From the IMG/VR virus record IMGVR_UViG_3300036770_008729, positions 62,001 to 126,000 of that record: a stretch of DNA of 64,000 nucleotides; one strand, 5' to 3'. Made by a program: the position numbers and the translations under genes. The notes under the pieces are model-generated. The model did no database searches. It saw only the letters and a program-made list of their open reading frames with translations, and was not told where the DNA came from. Below are positions 2,787 through 23,671 of this stretch, piece after piece (the first letter of the stretch is position 1; each line of letters opens with the position of its first letter).

Positions 2787-3226
2787 TATAATTCGTTAAA
2801 CTTTTTGATTTTTCCACCATCATTAGAAAGTGATTTTTCACCTTTAAGTGGTTCGTGATTTGTCTTTGCTTTTTTAGTAGGAACATCTACTTCTTGTAAA
2901 GAATTTTCAGGCTTTAATTTCTTATCCTTTTTTCCAAACTTTATAAAGTTTTGCTTTTTCATATCTTTACTAAGCTTCTGAGATTTATTATCTATTGCAT
3001 ACATTTTAACAGTTGATGCAACTTCTTCTGAAAGAAACTTTTCACCATCTAATTTTTTATTAGAAGGCTTTGTTGATTTCATAATCATTTTAGGATTACT
3101 CAATGATTTATCAGCATCTAACTTGTTATTAGTTGGATTTTTAGCTTTTACATGACCTTGCTCCTTAGCATCATCAGAAAGATTTGGTAGCTCATCATTA
3201 ATAGGATGTTGTTTCAAATGTTTCAT
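2786..3226 (-). CDS. Lys-rich hypothetical protein
   Basis: Likely start MKHLKQHPINDE at 3226, preceded by ATAAATATAAC; ends IKKFNEL. Confidence 0.65.
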   Translation of the reverse strand: MKHLKQHPINDELPNLSDDAKEQGHVKAKNPTNNKLDADKSLSNPKMIMKSTKPSNKKLDGEKFLSEEVASTVKMYAIDNKSQKLSKDMKKQNFIKFGKKDKKLKPENSLQEVDVPTKKAKTNHEPLKGEKSLSNDGGKIKKFNEL

Positions 3227-3253
3227 AGTTATATTTATCAATTATTTTTTTAG

Positions 3254-3700
3254 TTAGAACTCATCATCATCTATTATAGTTGGATCATATGGATGAAAAT
3301 CTCTTCTTTTCTTATAGTTAATTGTAGGTTTTTTCTCAATAAAATCTTCTATTTTATCATACAACCTTAAACACTCATCATCTATATCTTTTAATTGTAA
3401 TTCTTTACCATTGTAACTGATAGTTCTGTTGTTATCATCAAGTGTAACATTTCCATCCATTAGATATATGATGTAAACACCGGGTTCGATTTCTACTACA
3501 CCTTTTACAACTTTTATACCATCTTGAAGGCGAGCGGATTGAATAGAGTGATTGTCAATCATTCTGTGAATTTTTTCTAATGTATCTCTGTCCTCTTTTT
3601 TATCGATGTTCAAAACTCTACGAGTTCCTCTTACAAGTCTTTGCATTAAAGGTTCCTTTTTAGGCTCTTCAAATTCTTCGAATAATTTTATATACTTCAT
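3254..3700 (-). CDS. hypothetical protein with CTS-like N-terminus
   Basis: Starts MKYIKLFEEFE; AATATATA 4 nt upstream. Confidence 0.75.
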   Translation of the reverse strand: MKYIKLFEEFEEPKKEPLMQRLVRGTRRVLNIDKKEDRDTLEKIHRMIDNHSIQSARLQDGIKVVKGVVEIEPGVYIIYLMDGNVTLDDNNRTISYNGKELQLKDIDDECLRLYDKIEDFIEKKPTINYKKRRDFHPYDPTIIDDDEF

Positions 3701-4269: not shown

Positions 4270-7200
4270 TCAATTTATTTTGTTAACAATTTTGTTTATA
4301 ACCTTAATATATTCTAAATCTATAATCTTTATTAGGTAAATTCCAGTCTTAGATTCTCCTAAATCTTGTTTTATTTTAGTAATACCTTGACTAACACTTT
4401 GCTTTTTTTGACTTATAAGTTTACCACTAATATCATAAACTTCTATCATAAGCTGTGTTTGATTTTTAGTAATATATTCTACAACAAACTCATTTTGTGT
4501 TGGATTAGGATATACTTTTGCATCCACTTCATCTAATTTAATTTGTGAAGTCTTAACAATCAAACTATCATTATTAGGATTTGCTTGTCTTTGTGTTATA
4601 CAACCAGCTTGTATTACTAAAGTTCTCCAAGTACTAGTTCCACAATTAGTTACTGATCGAACTGATAAAGTTCCTCCATTGAATCCCGATGAGAATGTAA
4701 CATCGATTATTCTACTAATGGAAGAACCAGTAGTTCCATTTGGTAACATCCATTGATAACTTGTTGCGCCATTTACTGCTACAATACTGTAAGTGGATGT
4801 TGCTCCTATGTTACCACATGTTGGTCCTGAGATTGCTCCGGGCACTGGTGGTGTTTTACTTATTGATAATGTTCTTGCTGTACTTCTAACACCACAAGCG
4901 TTTTGTGCTTGAACTTGTATAGTACCTCCAGTAAATTGTGGACTAAACTGTACTAATACATTTCTAGTACCTTGACCTTGAACTATTGTGGCGTTGGATG
5001 GTGCTGTCCAAAAATATGAAGTCGCTCCTGATACTGTACTGCTTGAATACAATACATTACTTGATGTTTGATCTACATTAGTATAAGCAGAACAAACATT
5101 TGTTGTACCTGTAATTCTAGTTGGTGTTGCAGGTGCATTAGTACCCGAACTTGTGACAGTTAAGGTACTTGGTGATCCAGTACCACAACTATTGATTGAT
5201 GCCACTGTTATGTTCCCACTTACAAATGAACTTGTAATAGTGACTTGGATAGTATTAGTACCTTGACCATTGTTTAATGTAATACCATTTGGTACTGTCC
5301 AAGAATAACCAATAGTGGCGTCATACATTGGTGATATTGAGTATGAAGTAGTTGTAGCACAAGTACTTGTTGGACCACTAATCGGACCTGGTATTCCAGG
5401 TAAAGAGTTGATTGTGATAGTAGATGAAGCTGATGATATACAATTGCCTGTTGATGCAGTGTATGTCATTGTACTTGTATTTTTAGCATAAACTGTATTT
5501 CTAATATCACCAGTATAAGATTGTGTTGCTGTTGGATTTATATATAATCCAGTTAATGGTGACCAGGTTACCATTGTTGGAGCATATATACCAAACTTCA
5601 TGTTTGGACGATACTTACTACTTATAAGATTGTTTGCTTCATTAAGTGGTTCACAAACTGAAAAGTCATTATCATAACCTCCATAAACTGAGTTAAATGA
5701 AGTTTGACTAAACTCTACTGCTGAGTTTGTACCAGTACAGTTGCTACAAGAATTGTTTACATCATTGTCGTGACAGATCTCTATTACAATATTGTAAAGT
5801 GGATTCCATGTAAATGATTGATTAAAAGAATATACTTTCCATCCAACTGTAGGTGCTTGTTCTTGTCCAGTAGTGTAAACAGTTACAAAAGGACCTACGG
5901 TAACACTTAAAAGACTACCACTTTCTGTAATATAACCATAAGATAAGTTGTCATTTATGGTGTGAGCTATTTTAATTGTAAAGTTATTTTGGTAACCAGT
6001 ACCTTGTGATAGTACTTTTAATGCTAATGAATTTATATCACCAGCAACTAAACCAAGTGCAAGTAATTCTGATGATCTAATTAGATATTGCACTCTTGAA
6101 CCTTCATAGCTACTTGTATAAGGTGTAATACCTGATTGACCAGTAAGAGTTGTATTGACTCCTAATTGACGACTGAATGTAGCTGATCCTCCTGTTGCTG
6201 TTAATGTTGTAATTGAATTACTACAAGCAGTTGTTATTGAAGGTGTAACTGATAAAGCAGATGGTGTTGGGTTTATTTGTATGTCTACAGATGAAGAAGA
6301 ACTACAACCATCTAAAGTCGATGTTAAAGTATATGTTCCTTCATTATTGTATGTAGCGTTATTAATAGTTGGTGACTGTTGTGATGATGTATAGTTATTT
6401 GGTCCAACCCAACTAAATGTATTACCAATATCAGAACTTCCAATTAAACTTATAGTTGAATTTTGACATACAGAACTATTGTTTGTACTAGCATCTGTTA
6501 AAGGTATAGCTTTTATAGTCACACTAACTGGTATATTTGATGAACCACATTCTGAGGTAATAGTTAGTGAGTAGTTACCAGCATCAGCATTTGTAGTATT
6601 GTCAATTAAGAGTGATGGTGTTTCAGCACTTGGATTGATTGATGGATCAATTACTATACTATTTTTATACCATTGGTATTGCACTTGACTACCAGTTGCT
6701 ACAACTGTTAAATCTATTGGATCATTAAAACAAACAGATGATATTGTTGATGGTTGTGAAACAATTTGTAAAGTAGGTATTCCAGTTATATTAATAACAT
6801 CACTAACACTACAACTTCTGTAAGTTGAAGTTAAAGTATAACTATTTAATCCTACTAAAGCAGATGGTATAGTTGCATTTAAAGTACTTGCTGAAAAACT
6901 AGGACCTGTCCAACTGATTGTTGGTGCTACTGTATTTAAAGTAATGGTAATGCTCCAGTCATTAAATGTACCTATATCACCAGTATAGTCATCAGTAATA
7001 CGAAGTGTCCAAACACCATCAGCACTTCCAGTTAAGTTAGAAAAAGGTTGCTCAGGTGTGTATGTTCCTGTGAATGGAGCTGTACCTGATGTTATAGCGG
7101 TACCTGAAGTAGAGAATACTGTGTTAACATAGTTGTCACCAGTACTTCCATTATCACTTGATAAATCTATTGAAGAACCATTTGGAGCAATTAAAGTTAA

Positions 7201-17965: not shown

Positions 17966-18191
17966 TATATCATATAAAGTAGCAAATGGTAAACTCTATA
18001 AGCAATCTAAAGAACTAAATTTAGAATTTCTTTATGAGACTCAAGAAGATGTTTATTTTTGTTTAGAAAAAGATGATACTACTTATTATTTATCTGAGAG
18101 TTTAATCACCGGAAAGATTACTGTATCTGATGAGCATAGTAATGTATATCCTGGTGATAGAATGTTAAACTTACTTAAATTAAAAATATGA
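17958..18191 (+). CDS. hypothetical protein
   Basis: 77 aa, overlapping neighbours. Confidence 0.6.
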   Translation: MDNISYKVANGKLYKQSKELNLEFLYETQEDVYFCLEKDDTTYYLSESLITGKITVSDEHSNVYPGDRMLNLLKLKI

Positions 18192-18775
18192 ATATAATAA
18201 TACTTGGTCCTCCTGGTAGTGGTAAAGGAACCGTTTGTGAAAGACTTGTAAAAGATTTTGATTATCAACTAATCTGTGCTGGTGATATTTTAAGAAATGA
18301 AAAATCATCTGGTTCGGTTTTAGGTAACAAAATTGCCGAAATAATTGATAAAGGTAATTTAGTTCCTGATCAATTGATAACTTCTTTAATATTCAAAGAG
18401 TTTGAAAAACCAATTCGACTCGGTAGAAGTTACTTAATTGATGGATATCCAAGAACAGAAAAACAAGCTTTAGATTTAGACTCGATGATTAATGTCCCTA
18501 TTGTTATTTGGTTAGAAGTTTCAGATGAAACAACTATAAAAAGAAATTTGAAAAGAGGATTAACATCTGGGCGACCTGATGATGCAAATGAGGAAATTAT
18601 AAAACAAAGATTAGAGAATTATAAAAAACAATCCTTACCTTTGAAATCTTTCTATTCTGATATGATAGTAGAAATAGATGGAGAAGGAACAATTGAAGAG
18701 GTTTATAAAAGAGTAGTTGATACTCTTTTTGAAGATGTAAAAGAAATGAAAGATATTGAAGATATATTAGAATGA
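18188..18775 (+). CDS. adk: adenylate kinase (short LID)
   Basis: GPPGSGKGT P-loop, GNLVPD, DGYPR, RGLTSGRPDD. Confidence 0.92.
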   Translation: MNIIILGPPGSGKGTVCERLVKDFDYQLICAGDILRNEKSSGSVLGNKIAEIIDKGNLVPDQLITSLIFKEFEKPIRLGRSYLIDGYPRTEKQALDLDSMINVPIVIWLEVSDETTIKRNLKRGLTSGRPDDANEEIIKQRLENYKKQSLPLKSFYSDMIVEIDGEGTIEEVYKRVVDTLFEDVKEMKDIEDILE

Positions 18776-20040
18776 ATATTAAGAGATACATACCAACCTA
18801 TGAAGAAGCTGTAGAGTTATCCTCTTTTTCTATGTCACCTTTTTATGAGACTAAATTGGTGGTTGATGGTTATAATGTGTCTTTATTTAACTATCGCTTG
18901 GCAAACTATGGTGATTTCAAAAATCCACTTCCCGGTAAAGAAGGATTTGAAATGAGAGGTCTTACTTTTGTATTCAATACTGATGGTTCTCTATACAAAA
19001 GATATATCTTATTACATAAATTTTTCAACTTAAATCAAACTGAAGATTCTCTTTATTCGGAAGTAAAAGATTTAAAAATTAAAACTATACAGAATAAAGA
19101 AGATGGTTCTATTGCTTCTTTTGTAAAACTACCTAATGGTAGAGTAGTTGGTAAAACTAAAATGGGATTTGATAATCTTCAATCTGAGGCAATCAATAGA
19201 ATCTATAATTCTAACAAAGAACTAAAGAAATTTGTTAATTGGTCATTAGATAATGATATAGTTTCAATTTTCGAATATGTGTCACCATCTAACAGAATTG
19301 TTTTAAAATATAATAAAGAAGAATTAATACTTCTTAAACTTCGTTGTAATAAAACTGGTAAGTATTTAAATATGCCTGATTATACTTTTCAGATCGGTAA
19401 TTTAAAAGTGGCTGAGTTTGAAATGTCTACTACTTTAGATGACGTTTTAAAACTTAATGAAACTGAAATTGACAAAGAAGGTAGGGTAATTCATTTTGAA
19501 GGAGACCATTTTGTTAAAGTAAAGAATAATTGGTATGTATCATTACATGGATTACTTACTGAAGACATCTATAAAGAAAATGTTATTATTTCAAACATCT
19601 TAGATGATAAGATAGATGATATAATTGGTCAGATACCACAAGATGATACCTATACTCATAACAGAATTAATAAAATAATCTCTATTGTGAAAAAGTCGGT
19701 CAATGACAAAGTGTCAGAAATAAATGACGCTTATCTACATTTTGTCAATTTAGGTATATCTAAAAAAGATTATGCTATCAATTACAGAATTGATAATGAT
19801 AACTTTGTTTTTGTTATGAATATGATAAAGCATAATGAATTGAAATCTCTTTCTGAAAAAGAAGTAATTGACATTTATAAAGATTATGATTCTTATGAGA
19901 AATCTTTAATAAGAACTGATGTTTGGGAAATGGCTAAAGAGTTTATTAGAGATAAAACCAAAAGACTATTGATTGCTAGAGATTGGTTAAAGGAAAAAGA
20001 CGATAATTTATTTTTTATAGATTTAGAAGGTGATAACTAA
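18772..20040 (+). CDS. T4 Rnl1-like RNA ligase
   Basis: EMRGLTF, HKFFNLNQ, motif I KEDGS, FEYVSPSNRIV, EGRVI, VKVKNNWYVSLH. Confidence 0.88.
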   Translation: MNIKRYIPTYEEAVELSSFSMSPFYETKLVVDGYNVSLFNYRLANYGDFKNPLPGKEGFEMRGLTFVFNTDGSLYKRYILLHKFFNLNQTEDSLYSEVKDLKIKTIQNKEDGSIASFVKLPNGRVVGKTKMGFDNLQSEAINRIYNSNKELKKFVNWSLDNDIVSIFEYVSPSNRIVLKYNKEELILLKLRCNKTGKYLNMPDYTFQIGNLKVAEFEMSTTLDDVLKLNETEIDKEGRVIHFEGDHFVKVKNNWYVSLHGLLTEDIYKENVIISNILDDKIDDIIGQIPQDDTYTHNRINKIISIVKKSVNDKVSEINDAYLHFVNLGISKKDYAINYRIDNDNFVFVMNMIKHNELKSLSEKEVIDIYKDYDSYEKSLIRTDVWEMAKEFIRDKTKRLLIARDWLKEKDDNLFFIDLEGDN

Positions 20041-20407: not shown

Positions 20408-22273
20408 ATGAGTAAAATTATTGGTATAGACTTAGGGAGTTACAACTCCGCAGTATCAGTTTACGAAGGAACTGAAGTAAAAATCATTCCTAATTCCGAG
20501 GGTGGATTAACCACTCCTTCTTATGTAGCATTTACAAAAGATGGTATTAAAGTTGGTGAACCTGCTAAAAGACAAGCAGCCGTTAATCCAGAAAAAACAA
20601 TTTTTAACATTAAGCGTTTAATGGGTAAAACTTGGGAACAAGTTAAAGACCTTAAAAGACCTTATAAAATTGTTAATTCTAATGGAAGACCTGGAGTTAA
20701 GATTGATGATAAGACCTATTCACCCGAAGAAATCTCAGCGATGATTATTCAGAAAATGAAAAAAACTGCTGAAGACTTTTTAGGACACGAAGTTAAAAAG
20801 GCTATCATTACAGTTCCTGCTCACTTTAATTCAGAAGAAAGACAAGCAACTAAACTTGCTGGTGAAATTGCTGGTCTTGAAGTAGAGCGTGTAATTGCCG
20901 AACCAACAGCTGCTATTTTGAATGTTGATTCAAAATCAGAAAAGAAGTATGCAGTTTATGACTTTGGTGGATGTACAATGGACTTGTCTATTGTAGATGT
21001 AGCTGATGGGGTGTTTGAAATTCTATCGACAGATGGTGATTTGGATTTAGGTGGTTCTTTGATTGATGAGAAAATCGTTAATTGGATAGCTGATGAATTC
21101 CAAAAGTCAGAGGGTCAAGATTTAAGAAAAGATCCTATGGCTCATCAAAGATTGTTTGAGGCGGCTGAAAAAGCAAAGATTGAATTATCCGGTTCGCAGA
21201 CCGCGGAAATCAATTTGCCTTACATTACATCTATCGATGGAGTTCCTAAACACTTAGTAAACTCCTTATCTAGATCAAAGTTTGAGCAATTGATTGATGA
21301 TATCGTTGAAAGAACAATTGACAAAGCAAAATCTGCACTTAAATCCTCTGGATTAAAAGTTGGTCAGATTGATGAAGTTTTGTTAGTTGGTGGTTCATCA
21401 AGAATTCCTTTAGCTCAAGATAAGTTAGAAAAACTTTTTGGTAAGAAACCATCTAAGTCACTTAACCCTGACACTTGTGTATCAACTGGTGCTACAATTC
21501 AAGGTGGTGTTATTACAGGTAATGTAACAGATGTTTTATTACTTGATGTTCTTCCTATCTCATTAGGTATTGAAACAATGGGTGGAGTTCTTACTAAATT
21601 AGTTGAAGCTAACACAACGATTCCGACTCGTAAATCGGAAACATTCTCAACGGCGTCTGATAATCAACCATCAGTAGAAATTAATGTTATACAAGGTGAG
21701 CGTCCAATGGCTAAAGATAATAAGTCATTAGGAAGATTTCACTTAGATGGTATTATGCCAGCACCTCGTGGAGTTCCTCAAGTAGAAGTAACTTTTGATA
21801 TCTCAGCTGATGGTATTCTTTCAGTATCAGCGAGAGATAAGGCTACCGGTAAAGAGAATAAGATTCGAATTGAAGGTAGTTCTAAACTTTCTAAAGAGGA
21901 AATCGAAAGAATGAAGGCAGAAGCTGAAGCTAACGCTGAGGTTGACCGCCTTGAAAAAGAAAAGGTTGAAAAGCTGAATATGGCTGATAGTATGATTTTC
22001 CAAACAGAAAAACAGATTAAGGAATTTTCAGACAAATTATCTGATGAAGATAAGAACTCTATCAACACTGATCTTGCAGCTCTTAAAGAAGTCCATTCTA
22101 GTAAAGAAATTGAAAAGATTGACGAAGCTATTAAGAAGCTAAATGAAACTTGGACTGCTATAAGCACTAAAATGTATCAAGCAACTCAAGAACAACCACA
22201 ACCGGAGTCAAATCCTAACTCTGGTGATGGAGGAGATAATGTCCAAGATACAACTTTCGAAGAGGTTAAGTAA
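20408..22273 (+). CDS. dnaK: DnaK/Hsp70 chaperone with divergent phosphate loops
   Basis: [44 protein letters not shown], full lid. Confidence 0.96.
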
Positions 22274-22388
22274 TGTCTACTTTTAGGTCGTAAGTCAGGA
22301 AAAGGAACGGAACTGAAACCTCTTAGAAATAAGGTAAGGAAACGAATGTAAAAAGCCTGATGTTTTGACCCCGTTCAGTTAAAGACAT
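22273..22388 (+). ncRNA. candidate structured RNA downstream of dnaK
   Basis: Nested complementary pairs ATGTCT/AGACAT, GGTC/GACC, TCAGG/CCTGA, CTTA-GAAA-TAAG hairpin and crossing AACTGAA/TTCAGTT; lies before the terminator. Confidence 0.45.
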
Positions 22389-22395
22389 GAAAGAC

Positions 22396-22423
22396 AAAAC
22401 CCAGTCAATGACTGGGTTTTTTT
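22396..22423. terminator. bidirectional intrinsic terminator
   Basis: aaaacccagtca-a-tgactgggttttttt. Confidence 0.85.
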
Positions 22424-22429
22424 ATTAAA

Positions 22430-23671
22430 TTAATCTGATGAATATTCATCGTATCCACCACCAGTGTCTCTTAATTCTTTACCACTACCTTTTTCATAAT
22501 TATAAAGACATCCATCATCATCATTAAGATAAGACATAGTATCTAAATAAGGATATTGACTAAAATCTGAATCCTCTAAAACAACTTTTATCCTACACTT
22601 TTTAGTAGTTTTTCCATCTGTAATTGATTCATATTGATCCATATTTTGATTTCTTTTCCACCAGAATCCTTGTTTTTCAGCAAATTGTTTGAATAATTCA
22701 ACATCAGAATCTTGCATAGTATAAATTCTATCCATAAACTTTGCAGGTGTTCCATCAATTAAACAATTCCAAAGAATTGCTCTGCCTTTGATTTTTTCAG
22801 CAGTATATTTTTCACCTTCAATTTTACCATCATCTCCATAAAGTATCACTAATGAAACATTTGAATTTTCTGTGTAGATTTGAAAATATTCTTTTTCAAC
22901 GTCAGCCATACAAGAATTAGCAAGTGTCCCACCACCTTTTACATATCTATTATTGTCATACCAATAAGCAATATCATCACCTGTAGCTATATCAAATTGT
23001 TTAAGAATATCTTTTGCAAAGTCATAAGTCGCTTTATATTGATTTGTAAAATCTTCAATTTCTTTATCTGAAAATGTTATTTTAGCTGATCCTAATACTG
23101 CTCTAACTAATCTACCAATTCTAATTGGATTTCTAGATGTATTCCAAAGTCTCATATCTTCAGCTTCTGTTGGTTCCATCGCTACTTTATTGATAACACC
23201 TACTCTTGGATTATCAACACCATATTCTTGAAACATAACATAAATATTACCAGAACTTTGACTAACAGTTTCACCAGTGATGATACCTATTGTTCCTGAT
23301 TCGGGTGCCCAACATCCATATTTATCTTTATCATATCCTAAGGCTCTAAATAATCGATTATTGCCTGTACTATTTGTTAAGTATCTTCCGGATTCAATAA
23401 TTTTCCAAGTCTCAGGTCTATCTTTTGTAAGTTCTTGAACTTTTCTATCTGGAGTAAAACTTACCTCTTCTTTATTGTCTGTTATATCGATATAATTTTG
23501 TGTAAGTTTATCAACTTCTTTGTGATAAAGATTAAGTAAATCATTAGCAATTTTATTTGATTTCATTCTATTCAAAAGATTAATAAATTTCTTTGAATAA
23601 ATTAATTTCGATTCTAGTAATAGTTCATACAATTTACTTTCTGTAATATATTCTTGATATCTTTTAATCAT
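22430..23671 (-). CDS. 413 aa phage protein with CTS-like N-terminus and SCM...GRAILW...MDRIY...YPYLDT motifs
   Basis: Starts MIKRYQEYITES; conserved-looking C-terminal domain of unknown function. Confidence 0.8.
   Translation of the reverse strand: MIKRYQEYITESKLYELLLESKLIYSKKFINLLNRMKSNKIANDLLNLYHKEVDKLTQNYIDITDNKEEVSFTPDRKVQELTKDRPETWKIIESGRYLTNSTGNNRLFRALGYDKDKYGCWAPESGTIGIITGETVSQSSGNIYVMFQEYGVDNPRVGVINKVAMEPTEAEDMRLWNTSRNPIRIGRLVRAVLGSAKITFSDKEIEDFTNQYKATYDFAKDILKQFDIATGDDIAYWYDNNRYVKGGGTLANSCMADVEKEYFQIYTENSNVSLVILYGDDGKIEGEKYTAEKIKGRAILWNCLIDGTPAKFMDRIYTMQDSDVELFKQFAEKQGFWWKRNQNMDQYESITDGKTTKKCRIKVVLEDSDFSQYPYLDTMSYLNDDDGCLYNYEKGSGKELRDTGGGYDEYSSD

What the first reader, a model, noticed from the sequence alone, without database searches (positions are those of the whole stretch)
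22273..22388. Candidate pseudoknotted RNA between dnaK and its terminator
Seen: 115 nt non-coding with nested pairs ATGTCT(22273)/AGACAT(22383), GGTC(22286)/GACC(22367) and TCAGG(22295)/CCTGA(22356), plus a CTTA-GAAA-TAAG GNRA hairpin (about 22322-22333). The 3' segment CCGTTCAGTT (22371-22380) can pair with either GAACGG (22305) or AACTGAA (22311), crossing the inner stems. The terminator follows at 22396. Inference: a processed sRNA, ribozyme or switch co-transcribed with dnaK.
Basis: partly seen in the sequence, partly recalled or inferred. Interest (0 to 1): 0.6.

Follow-up and report, generated by a model that had tools for sequence, protein, structure and literature searches.

The report
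Conserved pseudoknot RNA in jumbo phages
The 116 bases between the phage dnaK gene and its terminator are a real, strongly conserved, pseudoknotted non-coding RNA that matches no Rfam family, turns up at three different loci in uncultured freshwater jumbo phages, and has an unknown function.

Summary
On this one sequence they are no better than chance: the fold scores z = -0.34 against shuffles. Comparison with relatives settles it.

- **Copies found:** 14 distinct copies in phage and metagenome contigs.
- **Conservation:** the two shells of the element are 91-97% identical, while the flanking genes are 56-78% identical.
- **Covariation:** P1, P3 and the inner hairpin show compensatory changes. 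The pseudoknot GAACGG/CCGUUC becomes GAGUGG/CCACUC in one lineage. Overall, 95.8% of pair cells are paired against 23-48% in slid controls.
- **Known families:** no Rfam family matches.
- **Distribution:** the element is single-copy per genome and missing from close relatives. It also occurs after two unrelated genes, once beside a tRNA/tmRNA island, so it is not dnaK-specific.
- **Transcription:** metatranscriptome contigs run from dnaK into the element.

Best reading: an accessory, independently folding non-coding RNA carried on the 3' tail of the upstream mRNA. The mode of action is inferred, not shown. I favour a stable partner-binding RNA; the rivals are a new self-cleaving ribozyme, a 3'-end protector and a switch.

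The parts
20408..22273 (+). dnaK (Hsp70) gene; its stop codon TAA is 22271-22273, and the last A of the stop is the first base of P1
   Evidence: Pfam HSP70 E 1.8e-214; ORF list
22273..22278 (+). P1 5' strand (ATGTCT), the closing helix; ACT 22279-22281 can extend it by pairing with AGT 22377-22379
   Evidence: Five of 6 pairs change on both sides across copies. L095 type has ATACTT/AAGTAT; L102 has an unrelated 11-bp helix in the same place
22279..22285 (+). J1/2 (ACTTTTA); only the A before P2 is constant
   Evidence: It reads ACTAAAAA in the L095 type and AGCGTAAAAA in L102
22286..22289 (+). P2 5' strand (GGTC)
   Evidence: Paired in 14 of 14 copies; one C-G to U.G change in L127, a copy found without the anchor pattern. 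Its invariance is otherwise partly forced by my search patterns
22290..22294 (+). GUAAG, 5' side of the P2/P3 junction; invariant
   Evidence: identical in L127, L130 and L131, which were found through a neighbouring protein and not by pattern
22295..22299 (+). P3 5' strand (TCAGG)
   Evidence: G-C to A-U in L009/L099, A-U to G.U in L102, one A.C mismatch in L097
22300..22304 (+). L1 (AAAAG); varies only between A and G
   Evidence: AGAAG, GAAAG and GAGAG in other copies
22305..22310 (+). Pseudoknot 5' strand (GAACGG)
   Evidence: GAGTGG in L102/L104, matched by CCACTC on the 3' side; 100% of cells paired; duplex energy -7.1 kcal/mol
22311..22355 (+). Variable inner domain, holding hairpin P4 (22319-22339: CCT-CTTA-GAAA-TAAG-gta-AGG) and a purine-rich, poorly conserved tail
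   Evidence: 78-85% identity among A-type copies and 38% against the B type, where another hairpin takes its place. The bulge base varies U/A/C
22356..22360 (+). P3 3' strand (CCTGA)
22361..22366 (+). UGUUUU, 3' side of the P2/P3 junction; invariant
22367..22370 (+). P2 3' strand (GACC)
22371..22376 (+). Pseudoknot 3' strand (CCGTTC), directly abutting P2 with no linker
22377..22382 (+). J3 (AGTTAA); the window lacks one A that every other dnaK-type and L095-type copy has (AAGTTAA or AAGTCA); L102's J3 is an unrelated AGCCTC
22383..22388 (+). P1 3' strand (AGACAT)
   Evidence: U.G wobbles in L009, L087, L088 and L130 fit the + strand only
22389..22423 (+). A-rich spacer and bidirectional intrinsic terminator (stem 22396-22420, then a T run)
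   Evidence: The same terminator follows dnaK directly in relatives without the element
22430..23671 (-). Convergent 413-aa ORF with no family match; it shares the terminator
   Evidence: not covered by any of the four RNA runs

Best explanation
The stretch 22273-22388 is one copy of a small family of about 116-nt non-coding RNAs in uncultured freshwater and subsurface jumbo phages.

Shown: a closing helix P1 encloses helices P2 and P3, which are joined by an invariant junction (GUAAG opposite UGUUUU). Six bases of the loop beyond P3 (GAACGG) pair with the six bases directly after P2 (CCGUUC), which is a pseudoknot. A peripheral hairpin (P4) can be swapped for another. The functional strand is the + strand. 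The element is single-copy, dispensable, and sits at different loci in different phages. Here, RNA-library contigs carry it joined to the end of dnaK and stop before the terminator.

Inferred: it is not a regulator of dnaK. It is an accessory RNA gene that rides on the 3' tail of whatever mRNA precedes it and is ended by an intrinsic terminator. After transcription, and probably after decay or processing of the mRNA body, the compact pseudoknot domain plus terminator persists as a stable small RNA. Its invariant P2/P3 junction and pseudoknot form the site that binds a specific partner, either a phage or host protein or a small ligand. The partner is unknown.
For: Conservation: the element is 89-92% identical in L008, L009 and L059, where flanking DNA is about 69-70% identical. 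By part, the 5' shell is 95-97%, the 3' shell 91-94%, the dnaK 3' part 56-78% and the downstream ORF 59-67%. Inside the element a tail segment has diverged freely and P4 is replaced in B-type copies. This argues for long divergence under selection and against recent transfer.

Structure: 95.8% of pair cells are paired against 23-48% when partners are slid. Ten pairs change on both sides against 0-2 in slid controls, and 0 of 500 shuffles reach this. The pseudoknot has two compensatory pairs. MFE folding independently recovers P1-P2-P3-P4 in L102, L088 and L098.

Strand: wobble pairs (U.G in P1 and P2, G.U in P3) work only on the + strand.

Non-coding: no frame survives the indels.

Not dnaK-specific: the element lies after a 73-82-aa ORF with its own terminator (L098, L127, L130). 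It lies after a 166-aa ORF next to an unknown RNA, a tRNA-Arg and a permuted tmRNA in L102. About 75 other dnaK loci lack it.

Accessory and single-copy. An element-less allele exists in a relative about 94% identical, and L002 appears to keep a remnant of the 3' end.

Transcription: RNA-library contigs X12 (21875-22361) and X16 (22217-22367) bridge dnaK and the element. None of four RNA runs covers 22398-23618. No sigma-70-like promoter lies just upstream in any of the three contexts.
Against: No partner, processing site or stable small RNA has been observed. The RNA evidence comes from assembled contigs, which show neither ends nor abundance. Typical trans-acting sRNAs do not have such an intricate conserved core. 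There are few independent lineages (about four), and most copies were found with patterns that fix 22 core bases, so the invariance of the junction is partly ascertainment. In L102 no terminator follows the element. Nothing here separates binding from catalysis.
Confidence: 0.4

Rival explanations
1. It is a new class of self-cleaving ribozyme. The invariant P2/P3 junction, clamped by the pseudoknot, would be the active site. Cleavage would trim the 3' end of the upstream mRNA or separate RNAs in a polycistronic precursor, as in the L102 RNA island.
For: The features are typical of small ribozymes: a compact fold of about 110 nt, a closing helix that is free in sequence, an exchangeable peripheral stem, an invariant junction and a long-range pseudoknot from the apical loop to the P1/P2 internal loop. 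From my own knowledge, twister has a similar layout. It is scattered, dispensable, sits intergenically on the gene strand in phages, and once lies next to tRNA/tmRNA genes. Phage ribozymes next to tRNAs are known (PMC10879173). Two RNA-library fragments from different studies end at 22361 and 22367, inside or beside UGUUUU, which is only a weak hint.
Against: No ribozyme family in Rfam matches, even at E up to 10. The hammerhead-like words (CUGAUG, GAAA, GUC) are not in hammerhead order. The fragment ends are equally explained by ordinary 3' coverage drop-off. The family is rare and single-copy. No cleavage data exist.
Confidence: 0.2
2. It is a cis-acting guard or processing signal at the mRNA 3' end. 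A mechanically stable pseudoknot in front of the terminator would stall exonucleases or direct an endonuclease, so it would stabilise whichever upstream mRNA carries it.
For: It always lies 0-13 nt after the stop codon of a same-strand gene, and in two of three contexts directly before a terminator. It is co-transcribed with dnaK. Pseudoknot stacks are known roadblocks, for example flavivirus xrRNA (my own knowledge).
Against: A roadblock does not need invariant loop sequences. Relatives do without it, using the same terminator alone. In L102 it sits among RNA genes and not before a terminator. Its topology differs from xrRNA rings.
Confidence: 0.15
3. It is a conformational switch or riboswitch. 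The 3' strand CCGUUC would alternate between GAACGG (the pseudoknot) and the next GAA-containing segment. A ligand, temperature or the terminating ribosome would set the balance, changing termination or decay.
For: The alternative helix is not cleanly refuted: 84.7% of cells are paired against 9-47% when slid. A 3-bp core is possible in all copies, and L102 can form 5 bp plus a bulge. Energies in the window are comparable, -7.1 against -5.6 kcal/mol. In L127 the MFE fold picks the pseudoknot helix over P2/P3. P1 starts within a ribosome footprint of the stop codon in every context. A terminator follows about 8-12 nt after P1 in two contexts.
Against: One pair of the alternative helix is broken in 7 of 14 copies, and in L008-type copies the duplex is worth only -0.3 kcal/mol. 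The continuous 7-bp version depends on a deletion unique to the window. There is no overlap or complementarity between the element and the terminator, so no expression platform is visible. The gene downstream here is convergent. The upstream genes share no function.
Confidence: 0.1
4. It is a DNA-level feature: a miniature inverted-repeat mobile element, a homing-endonuclease target or a recombination site. On this reading the pairings are incidental.
For: It has terminal inverted repeats (the P1 arms), presence/absence polymorphism between close relatives, and occupancy of different loci. A homing-endonuclease cassette is inserted exactly at its 5' edge in L087.
Against: There is one copy per genome in five genomes. 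The terminal repeats keep complementarity but not sequence, which a transposase site would not do. Internal helices and a pseudoknot covary, and the wobble pairs are strand-specific. No target-site duplication is visible. The element is present in RNA libraries.
Confidence: 0.05

Closest known systems
Twister self-cleaving ribozyme (architecture recalled from my own knowledge; Rfam models tested)
   Same: Stacked helices P1-P2-(P3) separated by conserved internal loops. A long-range pseudoknot links the apical loop to the internal loop next to P1. An optional stem emerges from the apical loop. It occurs sporadically between genes in phages and bacteria.
   Different: No match to any twister model, even at E up to 10. 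The conserved nucleotides are different. Only one pseudoknot is supported here, and a second (AAAA with UUUU) is energetically negligible at +1.6 kcal/mol. Cleavage is untested.
T4 stable RNAs C and D (species 1 and 2) in the tRNA gene cluster (own knowledge)
   Same: Small, structured phage RNAs of unknown function, co-transcribed with neighbouring genes and lying beside tRNA genes, as in L102.
   Different: No sequence relation has been shown. In this window and in the L098 type there is no tRNA nearby.
3'-UTR-derived bacterial small RNAs (general class; own knowledge)
   Same: A conserved RNA lies between a stop codon and the mRNA's own intrinsic terminator and is transcribed with the gene.
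   Different: Those RNAs act through a short single-stranded seed and usually lack an elaborate pseudoknotted core. No seed or target is evident here.
Flavivirus exonuclease-resistant RNA (xrRNA) and the sfRNA it produces (own knowledge)
   Same: A pseudoknotted 3'-UTR domain that could leave a stable 3' fragment.
   Different: The topology differs: there is no ring around the 5' end and the helix order is different. The enzymes and hosts also differ. No family match.
Candidate structured RNAs of IMG/VR (Fremin et al. 2023, PMC10690425)
   Same: Same data source and same kind of object: covariation-supported RNA motifs of unknown function in phage contigs, many of them overlapping terminators.
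   Different: I could not tell whether this motif is in that catalogue, because its supplementary tables are not held. The main text does not mention dnaK, jumbo phages or a motif like this one.

Membership tests
Any Rfam 15 family (4227 models, including all ribozyme, riboswitch, Y RNA, SRP, 6S and tRNA models) | Covariance-model score at or above the family's gathering threshold | tested here: not met
   No gathering-level match in the whole window. At E up to 10 over 22100-22600, the strongest matches lie on the terminator and the rest are weak, far-below-threshold matches to unrelated families, most of which run over the terminator. No match on the copies in L102, L098, L095 or L087.
Hammerhead ribozyme | Core CUGANGA - stem II - GAAA - stem III - UH, in that order around a three-way junction | tested here: not met
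   CUGAUG is followed by U where the core requires A, and no stem II/GAAA/stem III arrangement follows. No CM hit.
Transcriptional riboswitch | An aptamer in a 5' leader, with an expression platform whose terminator competes with aptamer strands, upstream of functionally related genes | tested here: not met
   The element lies 3' of genes. Here the next gene is convergent. A spacer of about 8-12 nt separates P1 from the terminator, with no complementarity between them. L102 has no terminator. The neighbouring genes are unrelated.
Riboswitch or aptamer in general | Specific ligand binding that changes the fold | not testable with these tools
   This needs in-line probing or ITC.
Self-cleaving ribozyme (any class) | Site-specific self-scission giving 2',3'-cyclic phosphate and 5'-OH ends | not testable with these tools
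   The only data are contig ends at 22361 and 22367 in two RNA libraries, which are uninformative.
Y RNA / Ro60 RNP | A Ro60 (TROVE) gene in the genome and a Y-RNA-like stem | tested here: not met
   GGUC.../UUGACC recalls the Ro-binding helix, but the 281-kb genome has no TROVE match while the control genomes were positive. No Y RNA model hit.
Miniature inverted-repeat transposable element | Multiple copies, terminal repeats conserved in sequence, target-site duplication | tested here: not met
   One copy in each of five genomes. The terminal arms covary and are not conserved in sequence. No duplication at the empty sites.
Pseudoknotted structured RNA (generic, loop-to-3'-flank type) | Two helices with crossing strands, both maintained in evolution | tested here: met
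   P2/P3 and GAACGG/CCGUUC cross each other. P3 has one compensatory pair and the pseudoknot has two. P2 is 100% paired with one C-G to U.G change.
Protein-coding small ORF | A frame kept open across homologs, with a codon-like substitution pattern | tested here: not met
   Only stop-to-stop frames of 25-62 aa exist. One- to three-nt indels among copies break all of them. ATG 22273 is ATA in six of the 14 distinct copies, and L102 has an unrelated sequence there.

The most novel reading that the evidence does not exclude
The element is the first member of a new class of catalytic or ligand-sensing RNA: a self-cleaving ribozyme or a 3'-located switch. Its active or binding pocket would be the invariant GUAAG/UGUUUU junction clamped by the pseudoknot, and jumbo phages would use it to process or control RNA 3' ends.
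Probability: 0.25. Interest if true: 0.8.

Novelty: new variant of a known kind. Interest (0 to 1): 0.55.

Why it matters
Jumbo and huge phages carry many translation- and RNA-related accessories, but very few of their non-coding RNAs are characterised. This element is compact, about 116 nt, with a defined pseudoknot topology and an invariant junction. It is absent from Rfam, from 50,697 GenBank phage records and from the representative genomes of 185,579 prokaryote species. It has moved between loci and has been lost repeatedly, which makes it a clean candidate for biochemical tests of cleavage, ligand binding or protein binding. If it proves catalytic or ligand-sensing it would add a class. 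If it is a stable partner-binding RNA it would point to a new phage-host interaction. The case also shows that a fold with z near 0 on a single sequence can still be real.

Tried and rejected
- **Rfam:** searches at gathering and E-value thresholds on the window and four other loci gave only terminator-type noise, tRNA and tmRNA.
- **tRNA or tmRNA:** none in the window.
- **Y RNA idea** (GGUC/UUGACC helix): no TROVE gene in the genome.
- **MITE idea:** single copy in G000-G004.
- **Coding idea:** rejected.
- **CUUUU 22280-22284 pairing with AAAAG 22300-22304:** J1/2 is AAAAA in other lineages.
- **AAAA/UUUU second pseudoknot:** +1.6 kcal/mol and no informative variation.
- **Chance hits from pattern scans:** a pseudoknot-only pattern and a 3'-block-only pattern hit GC-rich coding DNA (L089-L094, L111-L113). 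The genome-contig scan returned one chance hit, in a sulfite-reductase-like gene of an Acidimicrobiaceae MAG (L106).
- **Covariance model R1:** no copy in about 75 further dnaK loci or in relatives of the L102 phage.
- **blastn of two variants against GenBank phages:** nothing.
- **Promoter scans:** no sigma-70-like promoter upstream in three contexts. Phage-specific promoters are not covered by that tool.
- **Literature:** no description found. The Fremin 2023 catalogue could not be checked.
- **RNAalifold on a MAFFT alignment:** it recovered P2 and P3 but not P1, because MAFFT misaligned the ends. The L102 P1 was therefore counted by hand.
Full report
**1. What is in the window**

The window is part of a 281-kb virus record with about 30% G+C. 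Its nearest GenBank relatives are uncultured huge phages of 630-735 kb and the Lak phages.

The dnaK (Hsp70) gene runs from 20408 to 22273 on the + strand. A 413-aa ORF with no family match converges on it from 23671 to 22430. A bidirectional intrinsic terminator lies between them at 22396-22420.

The stop codon TAA is 22271-22273, and its last A is the first base of the outer helix.

**2. Is it more than chance?**

On this sequence alone, no. The 120-nt stretch folds at -22.3 kcal/mol, which gives z = -0.34, and 65 of 200 shuffles fold at least as well. The better z of the longer stretch is due to the terminator. Rfam gives nothing beyond terminator-type noise.

**3. Comparative evidence**

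Eighty dnaK loci were fetched from IMG/VR. Three of them carry the element directly after the stop codon at 90-92% identity (L008, L009, L059), while the surrounding 3-5 kb is only 69-70% identical.

Measured by part against the window:

| Part | Identity |
|---|---|
| 5' shell of the element | 95-97% |
| 3' shell of the element | 91-94% |
| Inner domain | 78-85% |
| Last 160 nt of dnaK | 56-59% |
| Convergent ORF | 59-67% |

Pattern scans and a covariance model added further copies, bringing the total to 14 distinct sequences. They fall into four groups:

- **dnaK type with the window's inner hairpin (A type):** window, L097, L008/L101, L009/L099, L059.
- **dnaK type with a different inner hairpin (B type):** L087/L100, L088/L096.
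- **L095/L098/L103/L127/L130 type:** the element follows a 73-82-aa ORF and has its own, different terminator.
- **L102/L104:** the element follows a 166-aa Lys-rich ORF.

**4. Structure**

Column counts on the model-based alignment A7, with the pseudoknot written in, are.

- **Overall:** 95.8% of pair cells are standard pairs, against 23-48% when the 3' partners are slid by 1-3 columns. Ten pairs change on both sides, against 0-2 in slid controls. None of 500 shuffles reaches the observed value.
- **P1:** ATGTCT/AGACAT becomes ATATCT/AGATAT, ATACTT/AAGTAT, and in L102 an unrelated 11-bp helix (TGAGTACAGTA/TGCTGTACTCA) in the same closing position.
- **P3:** G-C changes to A-U in L009/L099 and A-U to G.U in L102. 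L097 has one A.C mismatch.
- **Pseudoknot:** GAACGG/CCGUUC becomes GAGUGG/CCACUC in L102/L104. That is two adjacent compensatory pairs, and all cells are paired.
- **P2:** GGUC/GACC never breaks. In L127 it shows C-G to U.G. L127 was found through a neighbouring protein, not through a pattern.
- **P4:** the GAAA hairpin is conserved in A-type copies, with a bulge base that varies U/A/C. In B-type copies and L102 another hairpin replaces it, and that hairpin itself shows an A-U to G-C change.

MFE folding of L102 (z = -2.5), L088 and L098 independently gives the same nested P1-P2-P3-P4 structure. The wobble pairs fit the + strand only.

The pseudoknot 3' strand follows P2 with no linker. The pseudoknot helix must therefore stack under P2, and P3 must fold back through the invariant GUAAG/UGUUUU junction. 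That geometry is an inference.

Two caveats apply. There are only about four independent lineages. Most copies were also found with patterns that fix 22 core bases, so the invariance of the junction is partly ascertainment. L127, L130 and L131 are free of that bias and still have an identical junction.

**5.

AACTGAA (22311-22317) with TTCAGTT (22374-22380) is a continuous 7-bp helix only in the window, which has lost one A that every other dnaK-type and L095-type copy keeps.

The idea is nevertheless not cleanly refuted:

- 84.7% of cells are paired, against 9-47% when slid.
- A 3-bp GAR/YUC core is always available, because GAA is repeated.
- L102 can form 5 bp plus a bulge.
- One pair is broken in 7 of 14 copies.
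- The duplex is worth -5.6 kcal/mol in the window but only -0.3 in L008-type copies, against -7.1 for the pseudoknot.

A switch is therefore possible but unsupported.

**6. Not a dnaK element, not a repeat, not coding**

The covariance model finds no copy in about 75 other dnaK loci. Exactly one copy is found in each of five genomes of 68-476 kb.

The closer dnaK relatives L005, L001 and L002 have only the same terminator a few bases after the stop codon. L002 seems to keep the last dozen bases of the element, which suggests loss by deletion. A metatranscriptome contig from a relative about 94% identical leaves the window sequence exactly at 22273 and runs straight into the terminator's A tract.

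Both other lineages show the same presence/absence pattern:

- Relatives of L102 have a tRNA-Arg, other tRNAs and a permuted tmRNA at that place, but not the element.
- Relatives of L098 with a DUF1281_C gene after the small ORF lack it.

No copy was found in the representative genomes of 185,579 prokaryote species, apart from one chance hit. None was found in 50,697 GenBank phage records. No reading frame survives the indels.

**7. Transcription**

The phage occurs in subsurface, freshwater and lagoon metagenomes, and parts of this stretch occur in six metatranscriptome runs.

In the four RNA runs that were laid, contigs cover dnaK. Two of them bridge into the element: X12 at 21875-22361, with adapters at both ends, and X16 at 22217-22367. 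None covers 22398-23618, which is the terminator and the convergent gene.

This fits co-transcription with dnaK and termination at or before the terminator. Contigs show neither ends nor abundance, so no processed small RNA has been demonstrated. No sigma-70-like promoter lies just upstream in any context.

**8. How it most likely works**

The following points are shown:

- It is an independently folding, selected RNA domain on the + strand.
- It is accessory, has been shuffled between loci, and always lies 0-13 nt after a same-strand ORF.
- In two of the three contexts a terminator follows about 8-12 nt later.
- In the third context it lies among RNA genes.

My preferred reading is inferred, with confidence 0.4. 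The element is an accessory RNA gene that uses the 3' tail of an mRNA as its transcription unit. The pseudoknot domain, with the terminator where one is present, survives as a stable small RNA. Its invariant junction and pseudoknot bind a specific partner.

| Rival | Confidence |
|---|---|
| New self-cleaving ribozyme | 0.2 |
| 3'-end guard or processing signal | 0.15 |
| Conformational switch or riboswitch | 0.1 |
| DNA-level element | 0.05 |

None of these can be separated without wet-lab data or raw-read end mapping.

**9. Comparison with known systems and novelty**

The element fails every Rfam model. The defining features of hammerhead ribozymes, transcriptional riboswitches, Y RNA and MITEs were tested and not met (see the membership table).

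In architecture it most resembles small ribozymes such as twister. In context it resembles 3'-UTR-derived sRNAs and the uncharacterised stable RNAs of the T4 tRNA cluster. Both resemblances rest on my own knowledge.

It may be among the 8,495 unnamed IMG/VR candidates of Fremin et al. 2023 (PMC10690425). I could not check this.

I rate it a new family of a known kind of object. It is of moderate interest now and of high interest if it proves catalytic or ligand-sensing.

Noticed in passing
L087:814-1884 (IMGVR_UViG_3300042691_047309): A cassette is inserted between the last codons of dnaK (…GAAGAAGTT) and AAGTAA plus the element. It holds a homing-endonuclease-like gene on the minus strand (283 aa; PHROG 12131 at 1e-15, DUF7487 at 6e-20) and an 87-aa ORF. 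dnaK gains a new end (…EEVP*) and a new terminator at about 805-830. The conserved junction may be the endonuclease's target.
   Followed up: partly
L102:1319-1545; L118:3612-3872; L120:1982-2235: A second unannotated conserved non-coding RNA candidate of about 220-260 nt lies beside the tRNA genes in relatives of the L102 phage. Shared blocks are GAAGATAGACAA, GTCTATTGGAAGGTGAG and CACTTGG. The long-range helix ATAGAC/GTCTAT becomes GTAGAC/GTCTAC in L120. No Rfam match.
   Followed up: partly
L102:1544-1618 and 2859-3296; L114:3536-3610 and 4713-5057; L118:3537-3611 and 5400-5803: These phage contigs carry a tRNA-Arg and a permuted (two-piece type) tmRNA with tag VKADYLAA or VNARYLAI, forming an RNA-gene island after a conserved 147-166-aa ORF. 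In L120 ARAGORN calls two tRNAs with odd anticodon loops (1723-1812 and 1910-1981), possibly intron-bearing.
   Followed up: no
window:22396-22423; L001:3060-3091; L002:3093-3125; L005:4858-4890: The dnaK terminator (AAAACCCAGTC-loop-GACTGGGTTTT) is nearly identical across phages whose flanking genes are only about 70% identical, whether or not the element is present. It is symmetric, with an A tract before and a T tract after, and it serves two convergent genes.
   Followed up: partly
L002:3079-3092: TTAAAGAGCAT, just before the terminator, resembles the element's last bases (TTAAAGACAT, window 22379-22388). It is a likely remnant left by deletion of the element in a 642-kb huge phage.
   Followed up: partly
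window:18188-20040: Directly upstream of dnaK lie an adenylate kinase gene (18188-18775; ADK 8e-40) and a T4 Rnl1-type RNA ligase gene (18772-20040; RNA_lig_T4_1 1e-14). An RNA repair enzyme sits close to a conserved RNA of unknown function, but no link was tested.
   Followed up: no
window:24019-25032 (-): A 337-aa protein with a peptidoglycan-binding domain and an N-acetylmuramoyl-L-alanine amidase domain, i.e. endolysin-like.
   Followed up: no
window:22273 (run X17, record 21): A metatranscriptome contig from a relative about 94% identical follows dnaK to its stop codon. It then continues with about 12 unrelated bases and the terminator's A tract in place of the element. Element-bearing and element-less alleles therefore coexist among close relatives in freshwater.
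   Followed up: partly
window:22361-22367: Two RNA-library fragments from different studies end at 22361 (X12, followed by adapter) and 22367 (X16), inside or beside the invariant UGUUUU loop. This could be ordinary 3' coverage loss or an RNA end. Only contigs were available.
   Followed up: no
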